Virus record (IMG/VR): IMGVR_UViG_3300042484_002457
Coordinates: 145,544-209,543 of that record
Strand: one strand, 5' to 3'
DNA length: 64,000 bases
A program made the position numbers and the translations under genes. Shown here in pieces: positions 102 to 57,727 of this stretch. The stretch's first letter is position 1. Each line of letters opens with the position of its first letter. The notes beneath the pieces are model-generated. The model did not search any database and was not told the origin of the DNA. It saw only the letters and a program-made list of their open reading frames with translations.

Positions 102-2366
102 ATGAATCCCACCGCCGAAATTGAACACATTGTTGAACAATCTGTAGCAATTGCTCAAACATTTCAACACGAATATGTCACAACCGAGCACCTGCTGCTG
201 GCCATGGTTCGATATGCACCATTTCGAAAAACACTGGAGAATTTTGGTGTAGAAATTGACATGCTGGATCAAGACCTAACCAGTTATCTGAGTGGGTTAC
301 AAAATCTTGTTAAAGAAAATTCAGATCTAACACCCAAAAAGACCACGGCTCTGGAGCGTATTTTTAATCGTGCCAATGTGCAGGTGATGTTTACCGGGCG
401 TAGACAAATGTCCCTGATTGATGTTTATCTTTCAATCATGGCTGAAGGCCACAGTCACGCACAGTACTATCTCATGAGATACGGTGTGAAGAAAGTGGAA
501 TTTGTGGAGTTCTGGCAAAAGAACTATTCTGCCCAGGCCAGTGCCACTGGCATGAGTGTGAATCAAGCCAATGACATTCTCAACGAGTACTGCGTTGATC
601 TCAGTGGTCGTGCTGCCAAGAACGAACTTGAGCCCATGATTGGTCGAGACACTGAACTACAGGAAATGGTCACTGTGCTGGCACGACGCTTCAAGGCCAA
701 CGTGCTCATGGTAGGCGATCCTGGCGTGGGCAAGACTGCCATCATTGAAGGCCTGGCCCAGGAAATTCAAGCCGGTCGTGTGCCTGAGTTTCTCAAGGGT
801 CACGAAGTATGGAGTTTGGAAATTGGCTCGCTGCTGGCAGGATCAAAGTATCGTGGTGATTTTGAGGAAAAGTTCAAGGCCGTGGTGTCAGCACTGGAAG
901 CCAAGAAAAACTGTATCTTGTTTGTGGACGAAGCGCACACCATGAAGGGTGCTGGTGCAGGATCTAGCTCTAGCCTGGACTTTGCCAACATGCTGAAGCC
1001 GGCTATTACCAAGGGCAGTTTAAAAATCATTGCGTCAACCACCTGGGAAGAGTATTACGAAAGCTTTGAAAAGGATCGTGCCCTGATGCGACGTTTCTAT
1101 CGTCTCAGCATTGACGAACCTGATGCTGCGACCACAGAAAAGATTCTTATTGGACTCAGTCCACGCCTGGAACAGTTCCACAATGTGTTGATTGACACTG
1201 AAGCTATTACTGCTGCTGTGGACTTGGCCAATCGCTACATTCATGATCGCAAGAACCCTGACAAAAGTATTGACTTGATTGATGCTGCTTGTGCTCGGGA
1301 ACGTGTGAAAGATGCAGGCTTGACAACCATCAACAAAGGCATGATTGAAGAACAGCTGAGCCGTGTGACCAGTGTGCCTGTAGACAAGTTACAGAACGAG
1401 CGCAGTGCCAAGATTGTGGAGCTAGAAGGCAATATCAAGCAACGGCTGTATGGACAGGATTCAGCTGTGGACACTGTGCTGGAACGTGTGTACATTAACT
1501 TTGCTGGTATTGGCAACGAGCGACGCCCCATGGCATCATTCCTGTTCTTGGGCCCCACAGGCACAGGCAAAACTGAATTGGCTCGACTGCTGGCCGACAA
1601 CTTGGACATGAAGCTGTTGAAATATGACATGAGCGAGTTCCAAGAGCGTCACAGTGTGAGTGGACTTATTGGTGCTCCCCCAGGTTACGTGGGCTTTGAA
1701 GACGGCAACATCGGCGGCGGCAAGCTGATTGCAGACATCAGCAAGAATCCTTTTTCAATTATCTTGTTTGACGAGATTGAAAAGGCACACCCTGACGTTG
1801 CCAACATCATGCTGCAAATGCTAGACGATGGTGTGCTGACCAGTTCAAATGGCAAGAAAGTCAGCTGCAAGAACACCATTATCATCATGACGTCTAACCT
1901 GGGCGCACGTGATAGTGAAAGCAATGCAATTGGCTTTGGATCACAAGAAAAAACTGGTGAGGACGATCGTGCACTCAAAGAGCACTTCCGCCCCGAACTG
2001 CGAAATCGTATTGATGCTATCTGCAAGTTTGGGCGCCTGGACCAACTGGCCATTAAAAAGATTGTGCTGAAGTTTGTGGCTGAATTGCAAACCAGTCTTG
2101 GCAACAAAAACATACGACTCACTGTGACCGAAGCCATGGTAGAACACTTGGCCGAAAAAGGTTATGATCCCAAGATGGGTGCGAGGCCTCTGGGTCGCAA
2201 GATTGACGAGTTACTGCGTGTGCCACTCAGCAAGCGTATCTTGTTTGATCGCCTGGACAACTGTGATATCACAGCTGACTTGGTGGAAGGTGGGGTCAAG
2301 TTTGATATTGCAACACACGAGACCAGCTTGCTAGACAGTGACGGAATTATTCGTTTCCCAGCATGA
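102..2366 (+). CDS. clpA: ClpA-like ATP-dependent Clp protease ATPase subunit
   Basis: Clp N-domain, two AAA+ modules (GDPGVGKT/FVDEAH; GPTGTGKT/LFDEIEK), IGF loop (NAIGFGS), GARPL motif, no ClpB middle domain. Confidence 0.9.
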   Translation: MNPTAEIEHIVEQSVAIAQTFQHEYVTTEHLLLAMVRYAPFRKTLENFGVEIDMLDQDLTSYLSGLQNLVKENSDLTPKKTTALERIFNRANVQVMFTGRRQMSLIDVYLSIMAEGHSHAQYYLMRYGVKKVEFVEFWQKNYSAQASATGMSVNQANDILNEYCVDLSGRAAKNELEPMIGRDTELQEMVTVLARRFKANVLMVGDPGVGKTAIIEGLAQEIQAGRVPEFLKGHEVWSLEIGSLLAGSKYRGDFEEKFKAVVSALEAKKNCILFVDEAHTMKGAGAGSSSSLDFANMLKPAITKGSLKIIASTTWEEYYESFEKDRALMRRFYRLSIDEPDAATTEKILIGLSPRLEQFHNVLIDTEAITAAVDLANRYIHDRKNPDKSIDLIDAACARERVKDAGLTTINKGMIEEQLSRVTSVPVDKLQNERSAKIVELEGNIKQRLYGQDSAVDTVLERVYINFAGIGNERRPMASFLFLGPTGTGKTELARLLADNLDMKLLKYDMSEFQERHSVSGLIGAPPGYVGFEDGNIGGGKLIADISKNPFSIILFDEIEKAHPDVANIMLQMLDDGVLTSSNGKKVSCKNTIIIMTSNLGARDSESNAIGFGSQEKTGEDDRALKEHFRPELRNRIDAICKFGRLDQLAIKKIVLKFVAELQTSLGNKNIRLTVTEAMVEHLAEKGYDPKMGARPLGRKIDELLRVPLSKRILFDRLDNCDITADLVEGGVKFDIATHETSLLDSDGIIRFPA

Positions 2367-3004
2367 CACTAGTATACCAACCACAGCCAAGAGACCGACT
2401 CTACTACGATCAGTATCAGTACTGCTTGACTTTTCAGCTCAGTCATTCTGGTCGCAGTCGCAGCCTGGACCCTGAAAAGATTCGCTCAGCTATTCATTTT
2501 GCCAATCTTTTGAAGTGGACCAATTCAAAAATCAGTGATGAACAAGAGAAAAATTTACTAGAGTGCGCCAAAATATTTAGAGAATGTAACCAGCCACACA
2601 AACGAATTGTGTATGCCAACTGGCAGTATGTTTATACCAATCATGAAAGTCTACTGGCACAATTGCACAGTCTTGACTTTGTAAAACATTCCAAACTCAC
2701 TGAAGCCGCAGTGACTCTGCCCCGGGATGTGGTAGTGCTTAAAAACAGCCAGTATCAGTTTAGAAGCTATTTCAGCAGTCGCTGGTTCAATCGAGAAGAA
2801 GTTGCTGCAATAAAGAACTTTCTGGTAAGCCGTGGCACTCAGTTTAGAACCACACTTGGTGTTCAGTCTCGATTAAATGGCCGATTCTTTTATCCCAACG
2901 ACTGGATGTTTGTGGATCACAATGACGAAAAAGATGCATTGTTGCTCAATCTTGTAGCAAGTCAGTGTATTAGAAAAACGCTGCCCATACAGATTGCTAA
3001 ATAA
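2363..3004 (+). CDS. hypothetical protein
   Basis: 213 aa ORF overlapping clpA stop (ATGA). Confidence 0.75.
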   Translation: MTLVYQPQPRDRLYYDQYQYCLTFQLSHSGRSRSLDPEKIRSAIHFANLLKWTNSKISDEQEKNLLECAKIFRECNQPHKRIVYANWQYVYTNHESLLAQLHSLDFVKHSKLTEAAVTLPRDVVVLKNSQYQFRSYFSSRWFNREEVAAIKNFLVSRGTQFRTTLGVQSRLNGRFFYPNDWMFVDHNDEKDALLLNLVASQCIRKTLPIQIAK

Positions 3005-3010
3005 TTTACT

Positions 3011-3178
3011 ATGGCAAAAATACACGAAGAAACAGTTGTGATCACACTGAGCAAGTTGATCAAAGAACGAGACACTGAAGAACAGTATCTTGCTACCAAT
3101 GACATCTGCGATGCATTGCAATCAGTAGCAGAAGAACTCCTGGGTCAAGGTGTATTGGTTGAAGTTGTGAGAGCATAA
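3011..3178 (+). CDS. small hypothetical protein (55 aa, MAKIHEETVVITLSKL...)
   Basis: ATG 3011 to TAA 3178 read by eye, fills gap, follows TAAATA 2998-3003, TAATG-coupled to next gene. Confidence 0.7.
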   Translation: MAKIHEETVVITLSKLIKERDTEEQYLATNDICDALQSVAEELLGQGVLVEVVRA

Positions 3179-3546
3179 TGACCCCCACAACACAAACCAT
3201 TCTGGGCACCACAATCTACGGTGAAGCTGCGGGCAACTACGACGGCAGCAGCCAGGATTGGTTCAGTGTGGCTCGCAAAGCTGCTGACTACTATCGTGGA
3301 TACGGTGGTGTTCAAACTGTGACAATATCAGTTGCTGGGTTTGAAGGCATCATGTACATCGAAGCCACTCTGGATTCTGACCCTGACTCTGCGGCCTGGT
3401 TTCCAACCTATACCTATGGTGACGGATCTAGCACACCTGTCACCGACTATCATCCTGCTACCATTACCGGAAACTTTACATGGATACGTGTAAGAGTTGA
3501 GGGATTTTCAGGTGGCACAATAAACTCAGTAACCATAACATACTAA
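3178..3546 (+). CDS. hypothetical beta-rich protein, possibly virion structural
   Basis: 122 aa ORF, G/T/S/Y-rich beta-sandwich-like composition, late operon. Confidence 0.65.
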   Translation: MTPTTQTILGTTIYGEAAGNYDGSSQDWFSVARKAADYYRGYGGVQTVTISVAGFEGIMYIEATLDSDPDSAAWFPTYTYGDGSSTPVTDYHPATITGNFTWIRVRVEGFSGGTINSVTITY

Positions 3547-3980
3547 TGAACCCTGACAAAATTTCTTTTGAATTTGATGTGGAGCGCACCCCTGCTGAGC
3601 CTGCCTTGGCTTTTCGTGTGCTGCATAACAATGTAGTGGTACACACCATGACGTCAGATCAAGAGTCTGTGAAATTTGACATTGACGACAGTAATGGCGT
3701 GCATCAAATAACATTTGAATTGCAGGGCAAGACCCAGGTTCATACTCATGTTGATGATCAAGGACAGATCACACAGGATGCAGTGATCAACATCAAAAAC
3801 ATCACAGTTGACGGGATTGAGGTTGGTCTTTTGATTTTTAATCATGCTGAATACACACATGACTTTAATGGCAATGGGCAACCAGTTGTTGAAAAATTTT
3901 ACGGTACCATGGGCTGTAATGGTTTGGCCACTGTGGAACTCACCACACCCATTTACCTGTGGCTTTTGGAAAACATGTAA
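3546..3980 (+). CDS. hypothetical protein
   Basis: 144 aa ORF TAATG-coupled to previous gene. Confidence 0.7.
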   Translation: MNPDKISFEFDVERTPAEPALAFRVLHNNVVVHTMTSDQESVKFDIDDSNGVHQITFELQGKTQVHTHVDDQGQITQDAVINIKNITVDGIEVGLLIFNHAEYTHDFNGNGQPVVEKFYGTMGCNGLATVELTTPIYLWLLENM

Positions 3981-3981
3981 G

Positions 3982-4650
3982 TTATCTCGACTTGCAATGG
4001 TCCCCGTGCCATCTACCAAAGTGTCCGGGAGCAAATGATTTTTGGCAGTATACACATGAGATTCGTTCAGAGTGAGCAAATGCGTATTTTTCTTTTTGCT
4101 CTGTGGTTCTATTCAACTGCTGCTGCCTGATTATTTCTCTACGTTCAGGAGTCATTTGATCAATAGTTTTTTGTCTCAGTATTTGTTTCAGCTCGTTACT
4201 AATTGGGCCACGCTTGTGTCCAGTATTGCCAGATGTTTTACCTCGGCGAGCAATAGCTGCTTGATGGTTTTTTCTAACCTCAGGATCGTGCATTGGGTTG
4301 TTTGTTTTTGTGTGTATTGATTTAATTCTACTATATTGCTGCCTTAATAACTCGTATGTTCTTCCAGTTATTTTGTGTCGTTGTTGATTCTGGTTTTCTA
4401 AATTCGCCATAGTCCAGGCAGCATAGATCATCTTTTCTTTGTGAGGGCTAACAACCATTTTAGTCAGTAACCAATGACAAACAAAGTGTTCTCGTGCAGT
4501 TAAATCCACCAAATTTTCTTTGAGATTTGACCCATCTAAACTTCGTGGTATAATATGATGTCGTTCTTTGTATTCTGTTAGAGATCTTGTTTTTGCTCGT
4601 TGAACAATGTTGTTATACCATGTGGTATATTTGTTGTCAATAAATATCAT
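3982..4650 (-). CDS. free-standing HNH homing endonuclease with basic NUMOD3-like C-terminus
   Basis: NKYTTWY...ERHHIIPRSLDGSN...NLVDLTAREHFVCHWLL HNH motif; C-terminal CxxC...HGDHC; start at MIFIDNKY after SD AAAGGAG. Confidence 0.85.
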   Translation of the reverse strand: MIFIDNKYTTWYNNIVQRAKTRSLTEYKERHHIIPRSLDGSNLKENLVDLTAREHFVCHWLLTKMVVSPHKEKMIYAAWTMANLENQNQQRHKITGRTYELLRQQYSRIKSIHTKTNNPMHDPEVRKNHQAAIARRGKTSGNTGHKRGPISNELKQILRQKTIDQMTPERREIIRQQQLNRTTEQKEKYAFAHSERISCVYCQKSFAPGHFGRWHGDHCKSR

Positions 4651-19342: not shown

Positions 19343-22048
19343 ATGTACATTACACAACTATTACCACAACAAACGTCTAGCATTCGTAGACTAGACGAAA
19401 GTGTCCTATTAGAAGATCCAGTATACCGCAAGTTCAAGACTGTGGGTCGTTACATTGCTGAACGCCGCATGAGCGAAAAAGAAATTCTACAAGTATTTGC
19501 AGACGCCGAAGCAGGCATGACTGACAAAGCTACCGGAGCCAACCGTACTATGTTAGGCCGTGGCAAAGATACCACCATGGACTTTGCTGGCGGTGTAAAA
19601 GACGCAGTGTCTAGTGTACTCAACAGCATACAGAATTCAGTTCCTGTTGCCGCAGTAGATGTTGCTTATGACCAAGCCACTGACGCTTTGGCCAATATGG
19701 CTGGCGGACAAAAAGGCAAAGTCATGCAGGCCATCAAAGGCTATCGCAACTTGGTCAAACAGTATCCTAAAACAGCAGGCTTTGCCAAAGCAGCCTTGGT
19801 TGCTATCGCTGGTCTAGCCACAGGCGGTGCAGGGTTGCCTGCTATTGCAGGTTTGACCTATGCACTGGATTCGGCTATCCGTGGAGATAAACTATCCAGC
19901 GTTCTTGGCAAAGGTGCTGGCGCTACTGCTGTTACTTGGGGCGGTCAACAAGTGGCCGGTGCTTTGGGCGGTGGAGATGCTGCTACTCCTGATTCAAATT
20001 CTCAAGGTCCAAATGTTGATGATAGAATTGATGCTGCTAGAGCAAGAGTTGACGCAGCCAATTCCAAATTAGGAATAGACGGGTCTGCACAGAACTACGA
20101 TGTTACAGGTAATGTCAGTCAGGCTGCCGGAGTTGATACACCTTTGCCACAAGGTGCCACAGTAAGATGCCCGTTGGGATCATGCAATGGTGATGCATGG
20201 CAAGTGAAGCCTGGCGAAACTTTTAGCGATATTGCACAACAAATTGGTGTGCCACCAGAAGAGCTAGTTAAACTGAATCCTGGGCTTGCTGGACCTGGCG
20301 GCACTTATACTGTGATGAAAGGTGACCAACTGGGATTTATTGCTCAAGCGCAAGGAACAACACCCGAAGCAATTCGCGCAGCAAATCCAGATATTAATTT
20401 TTCCAAGGCATTGCAGCAAGGACAAGAAATCAATTTACCTGCTGCTGGTACTCCTGGTCAAGGCAGTGTGTGGGCAGATTACAAGGGCGGCATGTATGGA
20501 GACAAAGCAGCCGCGCAAACAGCAGGTTCTGGCACAGGATCTGTTGGACCAACAAATCTTGGACCAAATTTTAATCCGGACAATGTTCCTGCAGGTTGGA
20601 CAATGAAACAAGCACCTAGTCCAATAGACACAACTGCTGGAACTACTCAACGTTATATTCCACAGTCTGATGGTACTTGGATTGATGCTAGCACGGGCAA
20701 AGTTGCAGATGCTGCTAAACTACAAGCATCGCAGGACGCTGTGAGAAATGCGTTGCGCACAGGATTTAAAGAATCTATCAAGTTTAAAACACTGCCAGTT
20801 GACAAATTAATTGATCACAAACTCACTGTAATGTCTTGGGCACTAAATGAAAGTGTAGGCAAACCACAAGGTCAAAGCGTACAGCTGACCACTGCTGGTA
20901 CCTACACAGTGTTTGAAAACGTTGACCGATATCGCAAGGCCGTCATGGAACTCAAAGGTGTGCCAGGCAGCACACGCCCAGCTCAATATCGACCAGACAT
21001 GTCCGGCGGCGCCGGCGTGAAATCCAAGCCAGGGATTGTTGGCAAAGGCCTTAACTGGTTAGACAAAACTGCAGGCAAAGTAGGCGGAGCACTGAGCAAT
21101 TTTGGACATCAGTTTACTACTAACGTCACAAAAGAAAAACTCAAGATGAACTGGCACCAGGCCGGCAAGCCCAGTGATTCAGATCAATTGGCTGCTTGGT
21201 TAGCCAAACAAGGTGTGCCACAAGACGTTGTTACCAGTGTGTATAGCAAGATGGGTATTCCTGTTAGTGCGCCAAGTCCAGTCCCAACACCTGAGCCTGC
21301 GCCAATGGATACTAATCCCGCACCAACACCGTCTCCAACACCTGTATCGATAAATCGTTCAGGCATTGGAAGAATAGCAGGATCAACTGAAGTTGCGTCA
21401 GGCTTGATAAATCCCAAAACTAAAAAACCATACACTTATCAAGAACTCAGAGCCATGGGCAGCGAACCAGAGACTGCACCAACTACTCCAACTACGCCAA
21501 GTACAACACCAACAGTTGCCCCAGTAGGTTACAACGCCAAGAACGTTATGAACCTGCCAGGCATGGAAAAATATGCCAAGCAGCCTGCAGCGCCGGCCAA
21601 GACAGCCAACTTTGGCGTACCCAATGCATACAGCAAAACTACTACCACAGTTAAACCCATGGCTGGGGTACCTGGTGCCAAGACTGCTACACCAGCAGCA
21701 CCTGTTGCACCAGCAGCACCTGCAGCGCCTGGCGTACCAGCAGCACCTACAATGAAAATTGGTGGCCAGGCCTTGAATCCAAAGAATCCCGCCGATAAAA
21801 AGATCATTGACAAAGTACAAGCACAGGCTGAAAAAGTAGCAGAAGCTCTTGAAATACCTGTGTCCAAAATGCTAGACCTAGTTGAGACAAAAGAAGATGT
21901 GCGCCAGATTAAAAATTTCATTGATCAGACCTTTGTAAAATATGGTATGATAGGCGAAAGTGCATTTGTTGTTCGTAACAAATTGATTGAGCACGTGACA
22001 CATGTTGGCGCACAACGCCGTAGAGAGTTTGCCCGCAAGAACAGCTGA
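19343..22048 (+). CDS. 901 aa LysM-domain protein with Gly/Ala-rich hydrophobic helices and Pro-rich linkers
   Basis: Two LysM repeats (WQVKPGETFSDIA...LNPGL; YTVMKGDQLGFIA...ANPDI...QEINLP); GFAKAALVAIAGLATGGAGLPAIAGLTYAL. Confidence 0.75.
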   Translation: MYITQLLPQQTSSIRRLDESVLLEDPVYRKFKTVGRYIAERRMSEKEILQVFADAEAGMTDKATGANRTMLGRGKDTTMDFAGGVKDAVSSVLNSIQNSVPVAAVDVAYDQATDALANMAGGQKGKVMQAIKGYRNLVKQYPKTAGFAKAALVAIAGLATGGAGLPAIAGLTYALDSAIRGDKLSSVLGKGAGATAVTWGGQQVAGALGGGDAATPDSNSQGPNVDDRIDAARARVDAANSKLGIDGSAQNYDVTGNVSQAAGVDTPLPQGATVRCPLGSCNGDAWQVKPGETFSDIAQQIGVPPEELVKLNPGLAGPGGTYTVMKGDQLGFIAQAQGTTPEAIRAANPDINFSKALQQGQEINLPAAGTPGQGSVWADYKGGMYGDKAAAQTAGSGTGSVGPTNLGPNFNPDNVPAGWTMKQAPSPIDTTAGTTQRYIPQSDGTWIDASTGKVADAAKLQASQDAVRNALRTGFKESIKFKTLPVDKLIDHKLTVMSWALNESVGKPQGQSVQLTTAGTYTVFENVDRYRKAVMELKGVPGSTRPAQYRPDMSGGAGVKSKPGIVGKGLNWLDKTAGKVGGALSNFGHQFTTNVTKEKLKMNWHQAGKPSDSDQLAAWLAKQGVPQDVVTSVYSKMGIPVSAPSPVPTPEPAPMDTNPAPTPSPTPVSINRSGIGRIAGSTEVASGLINPKTKKPYTYQELRAMGSEPETAPTTPTTPSTTPTVAPVGYNAKNVMNLPGMEKYAKQPAAPAKTANFGVPNAYSKTTTTVKPMAGVPGAKTATPAAPVAPAAPAAPGVPAAPTMKIGGQALNPKNPADKKIIDKVQAQAEKVAEALEIPVSKMLDLVETKEDVRQIKNFIDQTFVKYGMIGESAFVVRNKLIEHVTHVGAQRRREFARKNS

Positions 22049-22049
22049 A

Positions 22050-22143
22050 CACACCTTAGGACCGGTACTTGTTACCGTAAGTGTGAGGCGGCTGCTGCCT
22101 TGGAATTGAACGATTCGCTACCTAGTAAATTCCTAAAACGAGC
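22050..22143 (+). ncRNA. candidate structured RNA motif (three hairpins)
   Basis: ACAC-TTA/TAA-GTGT with inner GGTA/TACC; AGGC/GCCT; GGAATT/AATTCC in non-coding gap. Confidence 0.4.
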
Positions 22144-22155
22144 ATATACATCCCG

Positions 22156-22192
22156 CAGCGGCTTGACCAAGGCCGCTGTTTTCATTTATACT
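22156..22192 (+). terminator. intrinsic terminator overlapping a sigma70 promoter
   Basis: CAGCGGC/GCCGCTG then TTTTCATTT; TTGACC 22163-22168 in the loop, TATACT 22187-22192. Confidence 0.65.
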
Positions 22193-22215
22193 AGTACTTT
22201 ACAACAGGAGGTCCT

Positions 22216-22476
22216 ATGTCGGACAAAACTTTTAACGGCGATCAAAAAATCAAACTGATAACTATCATCAATGAGGGCATGGCAGTCATGCACGAAATTG
22301 AAACACTGCAAGGTGGCCTCAATGACACCATCAAAGCTGTGGCCGAAGAACTGGAAGTCAAGCCAGCTATTCTCAAGAAGGCAATCAAACTTGCACACAA
22401 AGCTGAATTTGGCAAAGAGAAACAAGACCACGAAACTCTAGAAACTATTCTTGAAACAGTGGGGCGCACATTGTAA
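22216..22476 (+). CDS. small helical dsDNA-binding protein (T4 DsbA / GapR-like)
   Basis: 86 aa, IKAVAEELEVKPAILKKAIKLAHK pattern, SD AGGAGG, next to DNA polymerase. Confidence 0.55.
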   Translation: MSDKTFNGDQKIKLITIINEGMAVMHEIETLQGGLNDTIKAVAEELEVKPAILKKAIKLAHKAEFGKEKQDHETLETILETVGRTL

Positions 22477-23112
22477 TTAATTTTTAGAAGCAGCTCTTCT
22501 CTGGTGTGCTAGTCTCATACGTTCTTTGGTCTCCGCAGAATGCGTTTTTCCTAGCATGCCCGACACTTTAGGTTTTTTACTGTATGTCTCTCTAAGAGAC
22601 TCTTTAATTTTCTTTTTTGTTTCTTCCGATCGCATCGATTTGCTACGCGAATTTCCAATTAGTGATTTACTAATTTTTTCCTTAGTTTCATCACTGGTTA
22701 TTTGCAAGGCTCGTTTATTGCGAATTTTTTGTTTGATTTTCTCAGATAGCATTTTGCCTGTTTGAGCAAGACGAATACTATTCTTGTGTTCTTCACTAAG
22801 TGATTCGCACTTGAATCGATTTTTTCCGTGAAAACAAGATCGATTCAATAGTAAATTGCTACCCCAGTTTTCAAATATCAATTGCTGTTCAAAATCGTAT
22901 GCATCATTGCCAGTATAAAACTCTGCAATAATATACCATACATAATCATCAAAGTTGTTAGAAACAATAAGGGATGATGTTTTATAATACATAAAATCTA
23001 CATTAGATGGTAATGTGTTGGCTTCTCTGTAGCCGATATAAAATTCTTTTGATTCTTTATGAATGCACATATAAACATACGGCATTGCCTTCGTTGATGG
23101 ATAAGTATTCAT
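22477..23112 (-). CDS. GIY-YIG-type homing endonuclease with NUMOD3 repeats
   Basis: YVYMCIH...FYIGYR; repeated (L/H)SEE.K.KI and GKTHSAETKERM motifs; start MNTYP after SD AAAAGGAG. Confidence 0.8.
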   Translation of the reverse strand: MNTYPSTKAMPYVYMCIHKESKEFYIGYREANTLPSNVDFMYYKTSSLIVSNNFDDYVWYIIAEFYTGNDAYDFEQQLIFENWGSNLLLNRSCFHGKNRFKCESLSEEHKNSIRLAQTGKMLSEKIKQKIRNKRALQITSDETKEKISKSLIGNSRSKSMRSEETKKKIKESLRETYSKKPKVSGMLGKTHSAETKERMRLAHQRRAASKN

Positions 23113-23180
23113 GCTGATTGCTCCTTTTAGCATTAGAGCCGGTGGATGCGTCCAACATCGCGACTGGCAACTTTATTTAT
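23113..23180 (-). promoter_or_regulatory. structured endonuclease leader (second copy)
   Basis: ATAAATA late promoter, nested hairpin, CTCTAATGC spacer, SD; homologous to 4651-4720. Confidence 0.7.
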
Positions 23181-23242
23181 CTTTTAAATTGTATTTAGAC
23201 TGCGTTTAGTTTATACTCTTAACTTAATATTGGAGAATTATC

Positions 23243-25906
23243 ATTAGCTACGTAGACAGTTTATTTGATCGTGAGCACGATCGCATTCATGTTGTTGAGC
23301 GCCGTGATGGTGTTCGCAAATATCAAGAATACCCGGCCAATTATGTTTTTTATTACGACGACCCACGTGGCAAGTTCAAAAGCATTTATAGTACGCCAGT
23401 ATCAAGATTCAGCACACGCAACAACAAAGAGTTTCGCAAAGAAGTTCGCATGCATTCCGGCAAGCAACTTTACGAAAGCGACATCAACCCTATCTTTAGG
23501 TGCTTGGAAGAAAACTACAAAGATGTCGATGCTCCAGAACTGCACACAGCATTTTTCGACATTGAAGTAGATTTTGATAAAGTTCGGGGTTTTAGTCCTG
23601 TTGAAGATCCATTCAATCCTATCACTGCAATTTCTGTTTATCTAGATTGGTTGGATCAGTTAATAACCTTGGCGGTGCCGCCCAAGGGCCTGAGTTGGGA
23701 AACTGCGCAAGATTTGGTCAAAGAATTTGATAATACTATTCTGTTTGATAACGAAGCAGACATGATCAAAACTTTTCTTGATCTCATTGACGATGCAGAC
23801 GTACTGTCAGGTTGGAACTCGGAAGGTTATGACATTCCGTACACTGTAAACAGAACCATACGTATTCTCAGCAAAGACGATACTCGTAAGTTTTGTTTAT
23901 GGGGGCAGTTGCCCAAGAAGCGCATGTTCGAACGCTTTGGTGCTGAACAAGAAACTTATGACTTGGTGGGCCGTGTTCACATGGACTATATGCAGTTGTA
24001 CCGCAAGTACACTTATGAAGAACGGCACAGCTACAGCTTGGACGCCATTGCTGAATACGAGCTAGGTGAACGCAAAACACAGTTTGAAGGTACACTGGAT
24101 TCCTTGTATAATCAACACTTCAAGACATTTATTGAATACAACCGTCAAGATACCTTGTTGTTAAACAAGCTGGACAAGAAATTGCGATTCCTGGAACTGG
24201 CCAGCGAACTGGCACATGCCAACACTGTGCTACTACAGACCACCATGGGCGCTGTGGCAGTTACCGAACAGGCCATTATCAACGAAGCACACGAACGTGG
24301 CATGGTTGTGCCCAATCGCAAACAGCGACTGGACAGTGAAGACACACAAGCAGCTGGAGCATATGTTGCATATCCCAAAAAAGGCATGCACGAGTGGGTG
24401 GGATCAGTAGACATTAACTCACTGTATCCGTCGGCCATTCGAGCCATGAACATGGGCCCCGAGACTGTGATTGGACAGTTGCGACCCATCATGACTGACA
24501 GGTATATTGCAGACAAAATGGCCAAGAACCGTGGCAACTTTGCTGACGCCTGGGAAGGCTTGTTTGGATCGCTTGAATACACTGCTGTGATGGAACAGAA
24601 TCGTGGCACTGAAATCATCATCGACTGGGAGTCAGGCCAAGAAACCAAGCACAGTGCCGCTGAAGTTTGGAACTTGATGTTTGACAGTAACCAGCCTTGG
24701 ATTTTGACTGCAAACGGTACTATTCTAAGTTTTGAGAAACGAGGTATCATTCCTGGTTTGCTGGAGCGTTGGTATAGTGAACGTAAAGAAATGCAGGCCA
24801 AGAAAAAAGATGCCACTGATCCCAAAGAGATTGCGTTCTGGGACAAGCGACAACTGGTCAAAAAGATTAACTTGAACAGCTTGTATGGTGCTATTTTGAA
24901 TCCAGGTTGCAGATTCTTTGACAAACGCATTGGACAGTCAACCACACTCACTGGTCGAGCAATTGCTAGACACATGGATGCTTACATCAATGAATGTGTA
25001 ACTGGCAAGTACGACCACCTGGGCGAAGCAGTGATTTATGGTGACACAGACTCATGCTATTTCTCAGCCTGGCCGGTGCTACAGAAGGAAGTTGAACAAG
25101 GACGTATGGAGTGGAGCAAGGAAACTTGTATTGCACTGTATGATTCAATTGCAGACCAAGTCAACGAAAGCTTTCCTACATTCATGGAACAGGCATTTCA
25201 TTGTCCCAGAGACATGGGCTCATTGATCAAGTGTGGTCGAGAAATGGTTGCAGATCGCAGTTTGTTTATCACAAAGAAACGCTATGCCGTAAACATCATT
25301 GATCTAGAAGGCAAACGACTAGATGTCAATGGCAAGATTGGCAAGACCAAGGCCACTGGCTTGGACTTGAAACGTAGTGATACACCCAAAGTTATTCAAG
25401 ACTTCTTGTTGGAAATTCTAAATAGTCTGTTGGCAGGCGCTGACAAAGATACTATTGTAGAAAAAATTCGTGAGTTCAAATACAAGTTTATGGAACGCCC
25501 GGGTTGGGAAAAAGGCTCACCCAAGCGTGTGAACAACTTGACCAAGTACGCTGCTGACGAAGCACGTGAAGGCAAAGCAAACATGCCTGGTCATGTGCGA
25601 GCAGCACTGAACTGGAACAACCTGCGTAGAATGAACTCGGACAACTACAGTATGCAGATTGTGGATGGTATGAAAACCATTGTGTGCAAGCTCAAGAGCA
25701 ATGCACTGGGCTGGACGTCAATTGGTTATCCCACAGATGAACAACGTTTGCCTGCTTGGTTTACAGAATTGCCGTTTGATAACGACCTCATGGAAGCCAC
25801 TGTTGTGGACAAAAAAGTTGACAACTTGTTGGGTGTACTAGAATGGGATCTAGCCTCAGCAACCAATACTGAAAATACATTTACATCATTGTTTAGCTTT
25901 GAATGA
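23243..25906 (+). CDS. family B DNA polymerase with 3'-5' exonuclease, probable non-canonical ATT start
   Basis: FDIE, SGWNSEGYDIPY, YNRQD exo motifs; DINSLYPS, KINLNSLYG, YGDTDS, KKRY; open frame continues 69 codons upstream of ATG 23450 to GGAG-N7-ATT AGC TAC GTA GAC. Confidence 0.9.
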   Translation: MSYVDSLFDREHDRIHVVERRDGVRKYQEYPANYVFYYDDPRGKFKSIYSTPVSRFSTRNNKEFRKEVRMHSGKQLYESDINPIFRCLEENYKDVDAPELHTAFFDIEVDFDKVRGFSPVEDPFNPITAISVYLDWLDQLITLAVPPKGLSWETAQDLVKEFDNTILFDNEADMIKTFLDLIDDADVLSGWNSEGYDIPYTVNRTIRILSKDDTRKFCLWGQLPKKRMFERFGAEQETYDLVGRVHMDYMQLYRKYTYEERHSYSLDAIAEYELGERKTQFEGTLDSLYNQHFKTFIEYNRQDTLLLNKLDKKLRFLELASELAHANTVLLQTTMGAVAVTEQAIINEAHERGMVVPNRKQRLDSEDTQAAGAYVAYPKKGMHEWVGSVDINSLYPSAIRAMNMGPETVIGQLRPIMTDRYIADKMAKNRGNFADAWEGLFGSLEYTAVMEQNRGTEIIIDWESGQETKHSAAEVWNLMFDSNQPWILTANGTILSFEKRGIIPGLLERWYSERKEMQAKKKDATDPKEIAFWDKRQLVKKINLNSLYGAILNPGCRFFDKRIGQSTTLTGRAIARHMDAYINECVTGKYDHLGEAVIYGDTDSCYFSAWPVLQKEVEQGRMEWSKETCIALYDSIADQVNESFPTFMEQAFHCPRDMGSLIKCGREMVADRSLFITKKRYAVNIIDLEGKRLDVNGKIGKTKATGLDLKRSDTPKVIQDFLLEILNSLLAGADKDTIVEKIREFKYKFMERPGWEKGSPKRVNNLTKYAADEAREGKANMPGHVRAALNWNNLRRMNSDNYSMQIVDGMKTIVCKLKSNALGWTSIGYPTDEQRLPAWFTELPFDNDLMEATVVDKKVDNLLGVLEWDLASATNTENTFTSLFSFE

Positions 25907-51766: not shown

Positions 51767-51841
51767 CTGGCGTTCGTATAATGGATAATACAGGGGATTT
51801 CTACTCCCTAAATAGCGGTTCGATTCCGTTACGCTGGACCA
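51767..51841 (+). tRNA. tRNA-Arg(TCT)
   Basis: CTGGCGT/ACGCTGG, GGGGA-TTTCTAC-TCCCT, GGTTCGATTCC, CCA. Confidence 0.9.
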
Positions 51842-51854
51842 AACTACTACAAAA

Positions 51855-52412
51855 ATGAATAGCAGTACTGATCGTCGCACTTTTCAGCTCAAGTCTTACA
51901 TCCAACGATGCAAGGACGATGGCAAAGAACCACAGGAAGAATATATGAAACTGTATCAAGACGAGGCTGACCGCGCCCGGGAAAATGAAGCCAGCGAGGA
52001 GTGGAAAAAATACAATCTAGAACACGACCTGCGTAGTACTAGTTGGATCTGCGACAAAGTCAAGTCACGCGAAGAGTATGCTCAAAACATCTATGCTGCC
52101 TTGTGCAACAACAAATTTGTGAAAAATGATGTTTGGCCCTTGCTCCAGGAACAACGCTGGTCATGCTCGTGGCGCTATGCCGGGGGCATTGTGGCTGACA
52201 TGCTCGAACAAGGTGATTACATTGACTGGTACTGTTCGGGCATCCGCGGCAGCGTCACACAAGAAGATTTCAAGGACATGACCCCTGAACAAATTGAAAA
52301 ACATCAGTGGATGAACAAGCATTTTGTGGGAGAAAGCTATGTTACTGATGAAGTACAAGAAGATCTGTTCAAGCTGGGCTGGATAGTAGTGGACAAGGAC
52401 CAAGACCATTGA
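51855..52412 (+). CDS. hypothetical protein
   Basis: 185 aa; YAQNIYAALCNN, WSCSWRYAGG, DYIDWYCSG. Confidence 0.75.
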   Translation: MNSSTDRRTFQLKSYIQRCKDDGKEPQEEYMKLYQDEADRARENEASEEWKKYNLEHDLRSTSWICDKVKSREEYAQNIYAALCNNKFVKNDVWPLLQEQRWSCSWRYAGGIVADMLEQGDYIDWYCSGIRGSVTQEDFKDMTPEQIEKHQWMNKHFVGESYVTDEVQEDLFKLGWIVVDKDQDH

Positions 52413-53686
52413 CTTATACTCTCAACGACAAAGATCGGTATGGCTACTACACTGTAGGCAACCAAAAAACCTACAGCAAGTTAGAAGCCATTGAATTTTA
52501 CGGCCAAAGCCGGCAGCCTATTCAGTGGCATTACAATACCCAAGTGTATGGCCAATTCAACTGGGGCCAGGACCCCCCGGGCAATTTAGAATTTTGGTAC
52601 CGTGCTAGAGCTGAACAGATTCGCAACGACTATGACTATATTGTGTTGTGGTATTCTGGCGGTGCTGACTCGTCCAATATACTCAATACTTTTGTAAAAA
52701 ACAATATCTTTGTTGATGAAATTGCGCAGTATACCACAGTAGATGGTACTCAAAACAAGCAAGATTACCTCAATGGCGAAATATATGCTACTGCTATACC
52801 ACAGACACAGACACTGTTAGAAAACAATCCGTTGTACAAAAACACAGTGCACAGAGTCATCGACATAACTGACCTCAATGCAAAGTTAATGACTGTAAGC
52901 GACAATCGATGGGACTTTTTCTATCACGTCAATCAATACTACTCATTCAGTGCGTTGAGTCGCAGTTACATAAGAGAAACTGTGTCTGCGTATCGTGAAT
53001 TGATCGAATCGGGCAAAAAAGTTTGTTTTGTATGGGGAGTGGAAAAACCTGATGTGTTCCAACAAAATAATCAATATTATTTACGTTTTGGCGATGGGCA
53101 GGATCATGCCGTAACTGCTCTTGCTCAGCAGCTGAATCGACCAGGAGAATACGATGAATTTTTTTATTGGGCACCAGACATGCCCGCATTACCGGCAAAA
53201 CAAGCTCATATCATATGCAGGTACTTAAACAATCTTACTGCCACAGATGTTGATGGTATTCATGTGCTAGATAATCACGGATACGAGGATACAGTTTACG
53301 GCACCACTTGCCCTGATCCTTATCTAACCAAGCCTTTGATCAAAATCACTAGATCAGGTCGTCCCTATGCTCTAAGCATGCGAGGCTTGCACAGGCTGAT
53401 ATATCCCGACTGGAATCCTAATTTAATTGTTGCCGGCAAACCTCATGGCCATATGTTTGCTCTTAAAGATACCTGGTTGCTTTGCAACTCGGCACCTGAT
53501 TGTGGACAACGATACTACACCAATGGGGTACCGGCACTGCGACAAAAAGTAAAACAAATTGACCCTAATCTTTGGCGGGAATACAAATTTGATCCCAAGC
53601 GAGCTCCATATATCGGCGGGGTGCATCGTTTTTACAATAACTATTGCTTGGGCAACGTAACAGCATTTGATCATGATAAAAATTGA
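52409..53686 (+). CDS. PP-loop family protein (paralog 1)
   Basis: GYYTVG, W.YN..VY, RAEQIRNDYDYIVLWYSGGADS, VDEI, EFFYWAP; TTG start. Confidence 0.7.
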   Translation: MTYTLNDKDRYGYYTVGNQKTYSKLEAIEFYGQSRQPIQWHYNTQVYGQFNWGQDPPGNLEFWYRARAEQIRNDYDYIVLWYSGGADSSNILNTFVKNNIFVDEIAQYTTVDGTQNKQDYLNGEIYATAIPQTQTLLENNPLYKNTVHRVIDITDLNAKLMTVSDNRWDFFYHVNQYYSFSALSRSYIRETVSAYRELIESGKKVCFVWGVEKPDVFQQNNQYYLRFGDGQDHAVTALAQQLNRPGEYDEFFYWAPDMPALPAKQAHIICRYLNNLTATDVDGIHVLDNHGYEDTVYGTTCPDPYLTKPLIKITRSGRPYALSMRGLHRLIYPDWNPNLIVAGKPHGHMFALKDTWLLCNSAPDCGQRYYTNGVPALRQKVKQIDPNLWREYKFDPKRAPYIGGVHRFYNNYCLGNVTAFDHDKN

Positions 53687-54857
53687 AAACAACCCCAAAT
53701 TGGGATTTTACACAGTAGGCCAAGAGAAATTTTTCAGCAAGCCCATGGCCTTGATGGAAGCGACAAAAACCAACCAGTTTCCCAAATGGAACTTTAATGA
53801 CGAAGTGTTTGGCACAATTAACTGGCACGATGAGCCTTCCCCTCATATAAATGAGCTATATCGTATTAGAGCACAACAGTTGCGCAACAAGTACGATTAT
53901 ATTCGTTTAGAGTTTAGTGGTGGCTCAGACTCAACTACTGTGTTGTACAGTTTTGTAAATAACAACATTCACATTGATGAAGTGGTTTTTCGTTATCCCA
54001 AGACTGGTGAAAAAAATGTCAACGATGACCCGTTCAACTACAAATGCGAGAACACTTTAAGTGAGGCAAAGTACGCGGCATTTCCAATTCTGAATTGGTT
54101 AACAACAGCTTCTCCACGTACTAAGATTACGTTGCATGACTATAGCGAAGACATGCTCAATAGTTCTTACGATGAATCTTGGGTATATCGTTCTAAAGAT
54201 TATTTTCAGCCCGGACACAGTTTCAAGCATTCTAAAATAGGGCACCATGATCACAAATTGCAAGCAGACTCAGGACGTAATATTTGTATCTTATATGGAG
54301 TAGACAAACCTAAAATTTGTATCAAGGATAGCAAGTGGTATGCGTACTTCATTGACATTATTGCCAATCACTCAGTAACTGATGCTGGAGAGTACAGCAA
54401 TCTTACTACTGAGTATTTTTATTGGAGTCCGGACTTGCCCGAAATGCTTGTAAAACAAGCCCACGTGCTCCGACGTTGGTTTGATCTCCCAGAGAATCGA
54501 ATGTTGCAGTATGTTTGCAGATGGCCCAACTACAGTTACACTCATCGCAATGCGTATGAATCTATTTTGAAACCGTTGATTTATCCTGACTACGATCCTG
54601 CTACGTTTCAAACCAACAAGGCCTCAAACAGTTTTTACAATGAAATGGATTTTTGGTTTTACCAAAACTTCAAAGAAACTCAGCAGTTTAAGATTTGGCG
54701 TGCTGGACTTGACCACCTAATAAATAGCATTGATCCCAAATATTTCAACTACGAAATGAAACAACCTGTGGGCTTTGTGGGATTTATCAGCCCATTCTAT
54801 TATCTTGGTGATGCTAGTTACACAGACACTGGCATCAACTCACACTTTAAATTCTAA
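53673..54857 (+). CDS. PP-loop family protein (paralog 2)
   Basis: GFYTVG, RAQQLRNKYDYIRLEFSGGSDS, IDEV, EYFYWSP. Confidence 0.7.
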   Translation: MIKIENNPKLGFYTVGQEKFFSKPMALMEATKTNQFPKWNFNDEVFGTINWHDEPSPHINELYRIRAQQLRNKYDYIRLEFSGGSDSTTVLYSFVNNNIHIDEVVFRYPKTGEKNVNDDPFNYKCENTLSEAKYAAFPILNWLTTASPRTKITLHDYSEDMLNSSYDESWVYRSKDYFQPGHSFKHSKIGHHDHKLQADSGRNICILYGVDKPKICIKDSKWYAYFIDIIANHSVTDAGEYSNLTTEYFYWSPDLPEMLVKQAHVLRRWFDLPENRMLQYVCRWPNYSYTHRNAYESILKPLIYPDYDPATFQTNKASNSFYNEMDFWFYQNFKETQQFKIWRAGLDHLINSIDPKYFNYEMKQPVGFVGFISPFYYLGDASYTDTGINSHFKF

Positions 54858-54864
54858 GGACCAT

Positions 54865-55773
54865 ATGAAAAAACTTTTAACTATATTATTATTGACATTG
54901 TCGTTGACTGCACACAGTCGAGAAAACGTTACAATTGCTTATAGTTGGGCCGCAAGCGATCCTGCCGCAAACTTTGATCGTGCGATCATCAACGAAGCCA
55001 ACCGTATTCAAGATCGATTTACATTTATTTTTGAAGCAAAGCCAGGCGCTGGTGGCACAGTTGCCGCAAACTTTGCGTTAACTAATGCAAACACAGTACT
55101 AGCAACCAGTTCTGCATTTTTTATTCGTCCCAATTTTTATCCAAACGACAGTCACGACGTTGGTGCCTTTAGAGAGATTATGCCCAAGTGTGTGGTCCCT
55201 GCATTGATCACCAGTGTAAAATACAATCGTTGGCAAGATGTTCCGCATGATCGTTACTTGACCATTGGAGTGAGTGGCTTGGGCACTACTACTCATTTGA
55301 TTGCTGAACAGTTGCGGTTAAAGTACCCAGATATACAAGTAATTCCATTCAAGAGCACTAGCGAAAGTTTAGTAAATATGCTCGCAGGACAAATTGATTT
55401 GTCAGTTAATTTTATTGGTGACGTTGAAAGTTGGGCTCGAGAAAATCACACAAAGAAAACTGTAAATCTATTAGGTGTAACTGGTACACAAACATTTGAA
55501 AATGTTCCTACTTTAATTAGTCAGGGGTTTAGTCCTAACTTGGCGTTTATGAGCCCGCCGCACCAGTACTTGGTTTCTGCCCGCATAGATCAAGGGCGTT
55601 TTCAAGAATTGCGTAGCATTCTTGCAAAGGCTGCAGATACTCCAAGAGTACGTGCGGCTTATTACATTGATCGTTGCCAACCTATAACTATCAAGGATAC
55701 CCAACTAGACCAATACTACCAAGATCAAATTATCAAGTGGAAAAAATTTAGTGCTGGAGTTAAAATTAATTAA
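54865..55773 (+). CDS. Bug/TctC-family periplasmic solute-binding protein
   Basis: Signal peptide MKKLLTILLLTLSLTAHS; KPGAGGTVAA, GVSGLGTTTHL, IPFKS...MLAGQID. Confidence 0.8.
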   Translation: MKKLLTILLLTLSLTAHSRENVTIAYSWAASDPAANFDRAIINEANRIQDRFTFIFEAKPGAGGTVAANFALTNANTVLATSSAFFIRPNFYPNDSHDVGAFREIMPKCVVPALITSVKYNRWQDVPHDRYLTIGVSGLGTTTHLIAEQLRLKYPDIQVIPFKSTSESLVNMLAGQIDLSVNFIGDVESWARENHTKKTVNLLGVTGTQTFENVPTLISQGFSPNLAFMSPPHQYLVSARIDQGRFQELRSILAKAADTPRVRAAYYIDRCQPITIKDTQLDQYYQDQIIKWKKFSAGVKIN

Positions 55774-55782
55774 GGAATCGTT

Positions 55783-56370: not shown

Positions 56371-56375
56371 CAATA

Positions 56376-56461: not shown

Positions 56462-56497
56462 AGACAACTGCAAGCAAAACTCACACAAGGAAAAAAC

Positions 56498-57725: not shown

Positions 57726-57727
57726 CC

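What the first reader, a model, noticed from the sequence alone, without database searches (positions are those of the whole stretch)
23225..23452. DNA polymerase appears to start at a non-canonical AUU codon
Seen: in-frame TAA at 23225-23227, then GGAG (23232-23235), 7 nt, ATT AGC TAC GTA GAC... and 69 sense codons (SYVDSLFDREHDRIHVVERRDG...YPANYVFYYDDPRGK) before the first ATG; no in-frame ATG/GTG/TTG. Established: AUU initiation of infC and pcnB limits expression and responds to IF3 level. Inference: polymerase dosage is throttled or coupled to host IF3 availability.
Basis: partly seen in the sequence, partly recalled or inferred. Interest (0 to 1): 0.6.

Follow-up and report, generated by a model that had tools for sequence, protein, structure and literature searches.

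The report
Phage DNA polymerase starting at AUU
In one lineage of a lake jumbo phage, the only DNA polymerase gene found really does begin with the weak start codon ATT instead of ATG; the change is recent and came in with a recombinant DNA patch carrying a selfish homing-endonuclease gene, so it does not look like an old regulatory design.

Summary
TAA 23225-27, GGAG 23232-35, then 7 nt, then ATT 23243-45 open an 887-codon family-B (T4/RB69 gp43-like) DNA polymerase. The first canonical start is ATG 23450, which is codon 70. The initiator Met of 80 close metagenomic relatives (71 ATG, 9 TTG) and of cultured phages Phosso, Atu_ph07 and GAP32 aligns exactly on this ATT. Codons 2-69 are under coding constraint and map onto the N-terminal domain of RB69 gp43.

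The ATT is not an assembly error. Four other JGI assemblies carry it, and Logan contigs from three lake runs span it unchanged.

The ATT is unique to this lineage. It lies inside a 1,174-bp patch (22090-23263) bounded by flanks 100% and 99.96% identical to a sister contig that has ATG. The patch carries a divergently oriented GIY-YIG/NUMOD3 homing endonuclease gene. It also replaces a conserved structured leader, with covarying helices, that the relatives have.

Best reading: translation starts at AUU. The codon is a recent, tolerated allele linked to the endonuclease patch. Weaker, IF3-sensitive initiation is a plausible consequence by analogy with E. coli. An evolved IF3-coupled throttle is not supported by conservation.

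The parts
23243..25906 (+). Family-B DNA polymerase CDS read from ATT (887 aa plus stop), T4/RB69 gp43-like
   Evidence: Pfam DNA_pol_B_exo1 and DNA_pol_B match. It aligns to RB69 gp43 from residue 5 to RB69 residue 13, E 3e-59. It is 51% identical to the Phosso polymerase and 45% to Atu_ph07 over the full length. It is the only PolB on the contig.
23243..23245 (+). ATT, the inferred initiation codon
   Evidence: It aligns with Met1 of Phosso (MSYVD), Atu_ph07 (MPFVD), GAP32 (MYVD) and 80 IMG/VR relatives, 71 ATG and 9 TTG. The same ATT is in L087, L088, L118 and L119 and in Logan contigs of runs X1, X2 and X12.
23237..23242 (+). Two further in-frame near-cognate codons (ATT 23237, ATC 23240) just upstream; possible alternative or additional start points
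   Evidence: Read from the sequence. ATC 23240 lies 4 nt after GGAG, the same spacing as GGAG-N4-ATG in most relatives.
23232..23235 (+). Shine-Dalgarno core GGAG, 7 nt before the ATT
   Evidence: Read from the sequence. Only 20 of 200 confident genes on the contig have GGAG upstream, against a background of 3.2%, with spacing mostly 5-7 nt. The relatives' polymerase genes also carry GGAG.
23225..23227 (+). In-frame TAA that closes the frame upstream
23450..23452 (+). First canonical in-frame start (ATG, codon 70). It is internal, not the real start, although the public gene call uses it.
   Evidence: ORF list. The JGI gene calls give the truncated 818-aa product. There is no GGAG before it. 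Residues 1-69 are conserved and belong to the RB69-like N-terminal domain.
22090..23263 (.). Recombinant patch of 1,174 bp that differs from sister contig L007, between flanks of 100% (21716-22089) and 99.96% (23264-25794) identity. It contains the ATT and the first 7 polymerase codons.
   Evidence: blastn and alignments. Loose ends at 23262 in runs X1 and X12 show that the SYIDA-type allele co-occurs in the same samples.
22477..23133 (-). Free-standing homing endonuclease gene (218-aa ORF): GIY-YIG-like nuclease domain plus NUMOD3 DNA-binding repeats, divergent from the polymerase
   Evidence: NUMOD3 matches at E 1.3e-6 and PHROG 314 'homing endonuclease' at 2.6e-14. Pfam GIY-YIG is sub-threshold at 18 bits, with 7 of 13 family members hitting GIY-YIG. 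In the AF2 model the N-domain has pLDDT 81-94, and the top 12 Foldseek hits are all GIY-YIG domains, led by I-TevI 1mk0 (prob 0.98). All 80 relatives lack it.
22216..22476 (+). dsbA-like small DNA-binding/transcription regulator gene, the conserved upstream neighbour of the polymerase; inside the patch (80% nt identity to L007)
   Evidence: phrog_12534 and phrog_639 match, with a weak Pfam Phage_DsbA hit. It is present upstream of the polymerase in all relatives and in Phosso, Atu_ph07 and the Vibrio phage.
23134..23242 (.). Divergent intergenic region of 109 nt: an AU-rich, unstructured polymerase leader that replaces the relatives' conserved structured leader
   Evidence: The fold gives z = -0.17. 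The initiation region has MFE -2.6 against a median of -8.8 kcal/mol and is 75% AU against 47%. The half next to the HEG is homologous to the L092 cassette.
23266..23283 (+). Perfect 7-bp inverted repeat inside polymerase codons 8-14, immediately right of the patch junction
   Evidence: Scan and alignment. Its function is unknown.

Best explanation
The gene is the only family-B replicative DNA polymerase found on this jumbo-phage contig. In this lineage it has no canonical start codon. Translation must begin at AUU 23243, or possibly one or two codons earlier at AUC 23240 or AUU 23237. Initiator fMet-tRNA would pair with the near-cognate codon, positioned by the GGAG 7 nt upstream in an AU-rich, unstructured leader. 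The ATT is a recent, lineage-specific derived state. It lies in a 1.17-kb recombinant patch (22090-23263) carrying a divergently oriented GIY-YIG/NUMOD3 homing endonuclease gene. The patch also overwrote the first 7 polymerase codons and the conserved structured leader seen in relatives. What is shown: the position of the start, the reality of the ATT, its uniqueness, the patch boundaries and the nature of the inserted gene. What is inferred: the ATT spread by linkage to the selfish endonuclease cassette (or by recombination at this hypervariable site) rather than by selection for a weak start. Also inferred: it lowers polymerase synthesis and makes it IF3-sensitive, and this is tolerated, perhaps because the leader's own SD-occluding structure was lost at the same time.
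For: Start position. Met1 of Phosso, Atu_ph07 and GAP32 and of 80 relatives at 82-87% aa identity (71 ATG, 9 TTG) aligns on the ATT. Codons 2-69 are constrained and match RB69 gp43 residues 13 onward. No upstream ORF in any frame enters the gene.

Reality of the ATT. L087 and L088 have identical ATT and differ from the window by 1 base in 12.7 and 14.6 kb. L118 and L119, from two further JGI assemblies, also have it. Logan contigs of X1 (22300-23433), X2 and X12 span it with 0 differences, and 24 lake-water runs hold the stretch.

Uniqueness. None of the 80 relatives and none of the cultured homologues has a non-canonical start. The pattern GGAG-N4-ATH plus the common N-terminus gives only chance hits in the viral and metagenome collections.

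Patch. L007 is 100% identical at 21716-22089 and 99.96% at 23264-25794, but divergent in between.

Endonuclease identity..

Lost leader. In the relatives 99.5% of cells are paired, 22 cells carry double changes against 2.7 in shuffles (0/500), and the slid controls collapse. The window's leader is unstructured.

Background. AUU initiates at roughly 0.1-3% of AUG in vivo in E. coli (10.1101/063800), about 5% in one phage-gene construct and 42-75% uncompeted in vitro, and IF3 discriminates against it (PMC5499595). Free-standing Seg endonucleases sit between conserved genes and co-convert flanking DNA (PMC2988022).
Against: There is no direct evidence of translation: no RNA runs, Ribo-seq or peptides. 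The contig is only about 58% complete, so a second polymerase, a phage IF3 or a special tRNA could lie off-contig. The ATT carriers are nearly clonal, so persistence under selection cannot be measured from sequence. The Logan data are contigs, which drop rare variants, so a minority ATG sub-population on the endonuclease-bearing allele cannot be excluded. That the endonuclease drove the exchange is inferred: the same intergenic site holds unrelated accessory genes in about 28 relatives, so general recombination at a hypervariable site would also fit. No donor of the patch was found. The E. coli figures for AUU efficiency may not apply to the unknown host, and SD use in this phage is low.
Confidence: 0.72

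Rival explanations
1. Adaptive throttle. The AUU was selected to keep polymerase synthesis low or tied to host IF3 activity, possibly as compensation for the loss of the conserved SD-occluding leader when the endonuclease patch arrived.
For: IF3 discriminates against AUU, and AUU limits infC and pcnB expression (PMC5499595; 10.1101/063800). T4 and RB69 polymerases repress their own translation through a leader hairpin overlapping the RBS (PMC3014915). The relatives here have a covarying structured leader whose third helix pairs with the first two Gs of the SD, and the window has lost it. The SD-start spacing changed from 4 to 7 nt, and three AUH codons stand in tandem.
Against: The AUU is not conserved: 1 lineage against 80 relatives and 3 cultured homologues. 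A related endonuclease cassette at the same site in L092 keeps ATG without any SD. Seven relatives with other leaders keep ATG or TTG. Local SD/start accessibility is the same as the relatives' median. Nothing shows that the relatives' leader is an operator bound by the polymerase.
Confidence: 0.15
2. Null or crippled allele. The start-codon change inactivates the polymerase gene, and the lineage is transient or survives by complementation from co-infecting ATG-allele phages.
For: AUU can be 30- to 1000-fold weaker than AUG in vivo (10.1101/063800). An ATG allele with an identical gene body co-occurs in the same samples (L007; loose ends at 23262). The ATT carriers are nearly clonal, so the allele is young.
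Against: The allele was assembled independently in at least 5 JGI metagenomes and is held by 24 runs released 2020-2024, at contig depths of 4-12 similar to the flanking DNA. The reading frame is fully intact over 887 codons, with 1 difference from L007 in 2,531 nt. Environmental co-infection rates make obligate complementation unlikely (this last point is inference).
Confidence: 0.07
3. Translation starts at the first ATG (23450), giving an 818-aa N-terminally truncated polymerase, as the public gene call has it.
For: It is the first canonical start, and JGI gene callers chose it.
Against: There is no SD before 23450. The 69 skipped codons are constrained, align with RB69 gp43 residues 13-80 of the N-terminal domain and are present in every homologue. 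The upstream stop/SD/AUH layout matches the homologues' start exactly.
Confidence: 0.03
4. Sequencing or assembly artefact: the true base is G (ATG), or the junction is chimeric.
For: It is a single-base difference from ATG in a metagenomic assembly. A sharp identity break lies 21 nt into the gene.
Against: Four further independent assemblies have the same ATT and the same junction. Logan contigs from three runs cross both the ATT and the junction with 0 differences, and no alternative base is reported at 23243-23245.
Confidence: 0.01

Closest known systems
E. coli infC (IF3) AUU start codon
   Same: The AUU stands at the position of the initiator codon behind an SD, and initiation there is expected to be discriminated against by IF3.
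   Different: The infC AUU/AUC is conserved across bacteria and is the sensor of an autoregulatory loop (PMC5499595). Here the AUU is confined to one near-clonal lineage, the gene product has no link to IF3, and no feedback is evident.
E. coli pcnB (poly(A) polymerase I) AUU start
   Same: A weak start on an enzyme gene, with the simple effect of limiting translation (cited in PMC5499595 and 10.1101/063800).
   Different: For pcnB the low expression is the established purpose. Here a low level is only inferred, and the codon looks like a recent hitch-hiker.
T4/RB69 gp43 DNA polymerase and its translational operator
   Same: Same polymerase family (E 3e-59 to RB69 gp43). The relatives of the window carry a conserved structured leader abutting or overlapping the SD, analogous to the gp43 operator hairpin next to the RBS (PMC3014915).
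   Different: The leader sequences are unrelated to the T4 operator, and binding by the polymerase is untested. The window lineage lacks the leader altogether.
T4 Seg-type free-standing GIY-YIG homing endonucleases (e.g. SegG beside gene 32) and I-TevI
   Same: GIY-YIG nuclease plus NUMOD3 DNA-binding module, intergenic position next to an essential replication gene, sporadic distribution, and a sharply bounded tract of foreign flanking sequence, as in co-conversion (PMC2988022; PMC10448857).
   Different: Activity and target site are unknown. The gene is divergently oriented. The nuclease domain is divergent (Pfam sub-threshold). The tract includes the neighbour's start codon, which it left non-canonical.

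Membership tests
Genes initiated at AUU (infC/pcnB type) | No canonical start in frame between the upstream stop and the conserved N-terminus | tested here: met
Genes initiated at AUU (infC/pcnB type) | The AUU occupies the position of the homologues' initiator Met, behind an SD at working distance | tested here: met
   (84 homologues). GGAG lies 7 nt upstream, and the genome's spacing mode is 5-7 nt.
Genes initiated at AUU (infC/pcnB type) | The protein's N-terminus is (f)Met decoded at AUU | not testable with these tools
   This needs N-terminal MS or initiation-site Ribo-seq. No RNA runs hold the stretch.
Regulatory AUU (infC-like, IF3-sensing) | The non-canonical start is conserved across orthologues | tested here: not met
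   80 of 80 relatives and 3 cultured homologues have ATG or TTG. No other ATH alleles exist.
Regulatory AUU (infC-like, IF3-sensing) | Expression responds to IF3 level | not testable with these tools
   This needs a reporter assay. No IF3 gene is on the contig, which is about 58% complete.
Family B DNA polymerase (T4/RB69 gp43-like) | Exonuclease and polymerase domains with catalytic motifs | tested here: met
   PF03104 and PF00136 are above cut-off. The alignment to RB69 gp43 covers residues 5-832 in two stretches. The translation shows Exo I FDIE, motif A D-x-x-SLYPS and motif C YGDTDS.
Free-standing GIY-YIG homing endonuclease (Seg/I-TevI type) | GIY-YIG catalytic domain | tested here: inconclusive
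   Pfam gives 18 bits against a cut-off of 22.6, and 7 of 13 relatives hit it weakly. The top 12 Foldseek hits are all GIY-YIG domains, with I-TevI 1mk0 at prob 0.98 and TM 0.62, but E is only 0.07. PDB sequence searches found nothing.
Free-standing GIY-YIG homing endonuclease (Seg/I-TevI type) | NUMOD-type DNA-binding module | tested here: met
   NUMOD3 scores 28.7-32.8 bits against a cut-off of 20.4. PHROG 314 'homing endonuclease' matches at 2.6e-14.
Free-standing GIY-YIG homing endonuclease (Seg/I-TevI type) | Intergenic, sporadic among close relatives, and flanked by a sharply bounded foreign tract | tested here: met
   It is absent from 80 relatives. The patch has 100% and 99.96% flanks. 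A related cassette sits at the same site in distant L092.
Free-standing GIY-YIG homing endonuclease (Seg/I-TevI type) | Site-specific cleavage of the endonuclease-less allele | not testable with these tools
   This needs an in vitro cleavage assay on the L007-type sequence.
gp43-type translational operator | Conserved RNA structure next to or overlapping the RBS of the polymerase gene | tested here: not met
   It is present in the relatives but absent from the window, whose leader is unstructured at z = -0.17. Binding by the polymerase is untestable here.

The most novel reading that the evidence does not exclude
A natural rewiring of replicative-polymerase dosage control. Invasion by a homing-endonuclease cassette deleted a conserved SD-occluding leader, a candidate autoregulatory operator, and the AUU start was then fixed as a compensatory down-tuning. 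This would make synthesis of an essential phage polymerase depend on the host's IF3-mediated start-codon fidelity.
Probability: 0.15. Interest if true: 0.6.

Novelty: new member of a known kind. Interest (0 to 1): 0.4.

Why it matters
There are three reasons. First, it is a clean, multiply assembled case of an essential phage replication gene running on an AUU start. Automatic gene callers miss it, and the public call is truncated by 69 residues, so such starts are probably under-counted in phage metagenomes. Second, the co-occurring sister allele has an identical gene body but ATG and a structured leader. That provides a natural matched pair for measuring what an AUU start and the loss of a leader cost a phage in the wild. 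Third, it shows a concrete collateral effect of homing-endonuclease-associated exchange: the neighbour's translation initiation region, start codon included, was replaced.

Tried and rejected
- Megablast of the region against cultured phages found nothing. Only the protein-level search worked.
- The search for a donor of the patch failed. The window's 26-mer from the polymerase 5' end has 0 hits in metagenome contigs, and the start-context pattern found only the two near-identical ATT carriers in viral contigs.
- Endonuclease relatives are at most 63% identical and mostly in other contexts. Only L092 shares the site, and it has ATG.
- The other inserts at the dsbA-polymerase site in relatives are not recognisable endonucleases. 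The idea that this site is a dedicated homing hot spot was therefore dropped in favour of 'hypervariable site'.
- No phage-encoded IF3, initiator tRNA, Ile tRNA or second PolB is on the contig. The contig is about 58% complete, so this is weak evidence.
- Compensation through a more accessible SD and start was not seen: local unpaired probability is 0.61, equal to the relatives' median.
- Upstream ORFs or frameshift entry were rejected. The 5-codon TTG mini-ORF 23230-23247, whose TAG overlaps the ATT, has no SD, so termination-reinitiation is considered unlikely.
- A genome-wide habit of non-canonical starts, or another genetic code, was rejected.
- PDB sequence searches with the endonuclease alone and with its family profile returned nothing.
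- Two literature searches failed on term format and were re-run.
Full report
WHAT IS THERE. The window lies on a 209.5-kb IMG/VR virus contig judged about 58% complete. Its nearest cultured relatives are jumbo phages: Sinorhizobium phage Phosso, Agrobacterium phage Atu_ph07 and the Rak2/GAP32 group. At the flagged site the sequence reads TAA (23225-27), TAT, TGG, AGA, ATT, ATC, ATT (23243-45), AGC, TAC, GTA, GAC. GGAG lies at 23232-35, 7 nt before ATT 23243. The frame stays open to 25906, and its first ATG, GTG or TTG is ATG 23450. The product has the two family-B polymerase domains. It aligns to RB69 gp43 from its residue 5 to RB69 residue 13 with E 3e-59. It is the only PolB on the contig.

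WHERE TRANSLATION MUST START. Phosso begins ATG-MSYVDAIH, Atu_ph07 MPFVDAYN and GAP32 MYVDGYMD. In each case the Met aligns on ATT 23243. Eighty IMG/VR relatives (82-87% aa identity) all match from that codon, carrying ATG (71) or TTG (9) followed by SY[IV]D. Codons 2-69 show third-position diversity of 0.41 against 0.12 and 0.08 at positions 1 and 2, and 2051 synonymous against 625 nonsynonymous differences. They are therefore coding and constrained. A start at ATG 23450 (codon 70) would delete most of the RB69-like N-terminal domain, and that ATG has no SD. No ORF in another frame runs into the gene. The only one nearby is a 5-codon TTG mini-ORF (23230-23247) without an SD. The polymerase has the longest 'startless' leader of 289 ORF-genes on the contig, so this is not a genome-wide habit or a different genetic code. 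ATC 23240 lies 4 nt after GGAG, the spacing the relatives use, and ATT 23237 is also in frame. They cannot be excluded as co-used starts, but homology favours 23243.

IS THE ATT REAL? Yes. Two other IMG/VR contigs from different assemblies (L087, L088) differ from the window by 1 base in 12.7 and 14.6 kb and carry the same ATT. Two further JGI assemblies (L118, L119) do too, with 0 differences in 1,800 nt. Twenty-four lake-water metagenome runs hold the stretch. Logan contigs from X1 (22300-23433), X2 and X12 cross the ATT with no differences, and no alternative base is listed at 23243-45. These are contigs, not raw reads, so rare variants would not show. The public gene calls use ATG 23450 and give a product truncated to 818 aa.

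HOW IT AROSE. Contig L007 is 100% identical to the window at 21716-22089 and 99.96% identical at 23264-25794. The 1,174 bp between these stretches differ. In the first seven polymerase codons the window differs from L007, and from the other relatives aligned, even at synonymous sites. From TTTGATCGTGAG onward the window and L007 are identical. Loose ends at 23262 in runs X1 and X12 show the SYIDA-type allele co-occurring with the same gene body. Within the patch, a 218-aa ORF (22477-23133, minus strand) sits divergent from the polymerase. It has NUMOD3 repeats and matches PHROG 314 'homing endonuclease'. Its N-terminal domain is weakly GIY-YIG by Pfam. When modelled, its 12 best structural matches are all GIY-YIG domains, with the I-TevI catalytic domain first. 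None of the 80 relatives has this gene. In about 50 of them the dsbA-like gene and the polymerase are 64-76 nt apart. In about 28 the gap holds unrelated accessory ORFs. A distant pair (L092: endonuclease 52%, polymerase 65% identity) has the same divergent layout and a homologous cassette-proximal intergenic sequence, but its polymerase starts with ATG. So the ATT is not a property of the cassette family. It is specific to this near-clonal lineage. A scan for GGAG-N4-ATH followed by the common N-terminus found only chance matches in both large collections.

WHAT WAS LOST. In 73 relatives the roughly 62 nt before the start are conserved and structured. One 4-bp hairpin has compensatory changes at three pairs. 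There is also a GGC/GCC helix, and a third helix whose pair 48-57 covaries (GC 47, AU 6) and which pairs with the first two Gs of the SD. Overall 99.5% of cells are paired, and 22 cells carry double changes against 2.7 in shuffles (0/500). Slid controls collapse. The helices are short and the sequences are related, so this is good but not conclusive evidence. It resembles in principle the T4/RB69 gp43 operator, a hairpin next to the RBS through which the polymerase represses its own translation (PMC3014915). The sequences are unrelated, however, and binding is untested. The window's leader is 75% AU and unstructured (z = -0.17, MFE -2.6 against a median of -8.8 kcal/mol), although the local accessibility of the SD and start equals the relatives' median.

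HOW IT MOST LIKELY WORKS. Shown: the polymerase ORF in this lineage can only open at an AUH codon behind GGAG, the allele is real and widespread in one lake system, and it lies in a recombinant patch with a homing-endonuclease gene. Established background: initiator tRNA can start at AUU. IF3 discriminates against it. In E. coli the in vivo yields are about 0.1-3% of AUG (10.1101/063800), with about 5% for one phage-gene construct and 42-75% uncompeted in vitro (PMC5499595). Free-standing Seg endonucleases co-convert flanking DNA and can displace a neighbour's expression signals (PMC2988022; see also PMC10448857). Inferred: the ATT travelled with the patch, or arose on it, and persists because a replicative polymerase is needed in small amounts, or because the loss of the SD-occluding leader offsets the weak codon. 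As an evolved device it fails the conservation test that infC passes.

LIMITS. There is no expression data. The host is unknown, and only 10% of confident genes have GGAG upstream, so the E. coli numbers may not transfer. The contig is incomplete, so the lack of an IF3 gene, of an initiator or Ile tRNA and of a second PolB is weak evidence. The direction of the exchange between the window-type and L007-type alleles is not determined, and no donor was found.

VERDICT. The regulatory interpretation is only partly supported. This is a new example of a known kind of start codon with an instructive origin, and its interest is moderate.

Noticed in passing
L007-L086, about 62 nt upstream of each polymerase start (alignment A2): The relatives share a conserved structured polymerase leader: a 4-bp hairpin with compensatory changes at 3 pairs, a GGC/GCC helix, and a covarying helix that pairs with the first two Gs of the SD. 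Together the last two could form a small pseudoknot. This is a candidate translational operator or regulator, and the window lacks it.
   Followed up: partly
window 22477-23242 and the corresponding gap in L007-L086: The interval between the dsbA-like gene and the polymerase is hypervariable. It is 64-76 nt in about 50 relatives. In about 28 it holds inserts of 0.8-1.75 kb with unrelated plus-strand ORFs of 204-365 aa, including a hexapeptide-repeat transferase-like one. In L034, L054, L070 and L083 the upstream ORF overlaps the polymerase start by 4 nt (ATGA or TTGA), which suggests translational coupling.
   Followed up: partly
L006:858-1511 (-) = G000:C1 about 52381-53034; also G000:C1 about 68614-69231 and about 20475-20807: The contig carries at least one more intact GIY-YIG/NUMOD3 endonuclease gene (217 aa). 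Its 5' end and upstream 37 nt are 89% identical to those of the polymerase-adjacent gene, which suggests a shared 5' control element. Weaker NUMOD3-like matches occur at two further places.
   Followed up: partly
window 23266-23283: A perfect 7-bp inverted repeat (GATCGTG..CACGATC) lies inside polymerase codons 8-14, immediately right of the recombination junction, and also appears in the other relatives aligned, though weakened in L022. Its function is unknown; it could be RNA structure, a recombination site or a nuclease site.
   Followed up: no
window 51767-63110 (G000:C1 197310-208653): A cluster of 8 tRNA genes (Arg-TCT, Leu-TAA, Leu-TAG, Glu-TTC x2, Asp-GTC x2, Tyr-GTA). No Met, fMet or Ile tRNA is on the contig.
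   Followed up: partly
window 19343-22048 (+), 22155-22179: A 901-aa protein with two LysM domains lies upstream. It is followed by a terminator-like hairpin with a T-run and then a promoter-like site before the dsbA-like gene.
   Followed up: no
L118/L119 gene calls; L003 (Vibrio phage 2.275.O) 1369-4368; L002 (Atu_ph07) 1501-4470: Three annotation issues in public records. JGI calls the window-type polymerase as a truncated 818-aa product. The Vibrio phage polymerase is annotated from a GTG 43 codons upstream of the homologous Met (MYIDAMF). The Atu_ph07 polymerase is annotated as two adjacent CDSs.
   Followed up: partly
whole contig G000: SD use is low. GGAG is upstream of only 20 of 200 confident genes, and any SD core of 48 of 200. 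The polymerase gene keeps GGAG in the window and in nearly all relatives. This may say something about the unknown host's mode of initiation.
   Followed up: no
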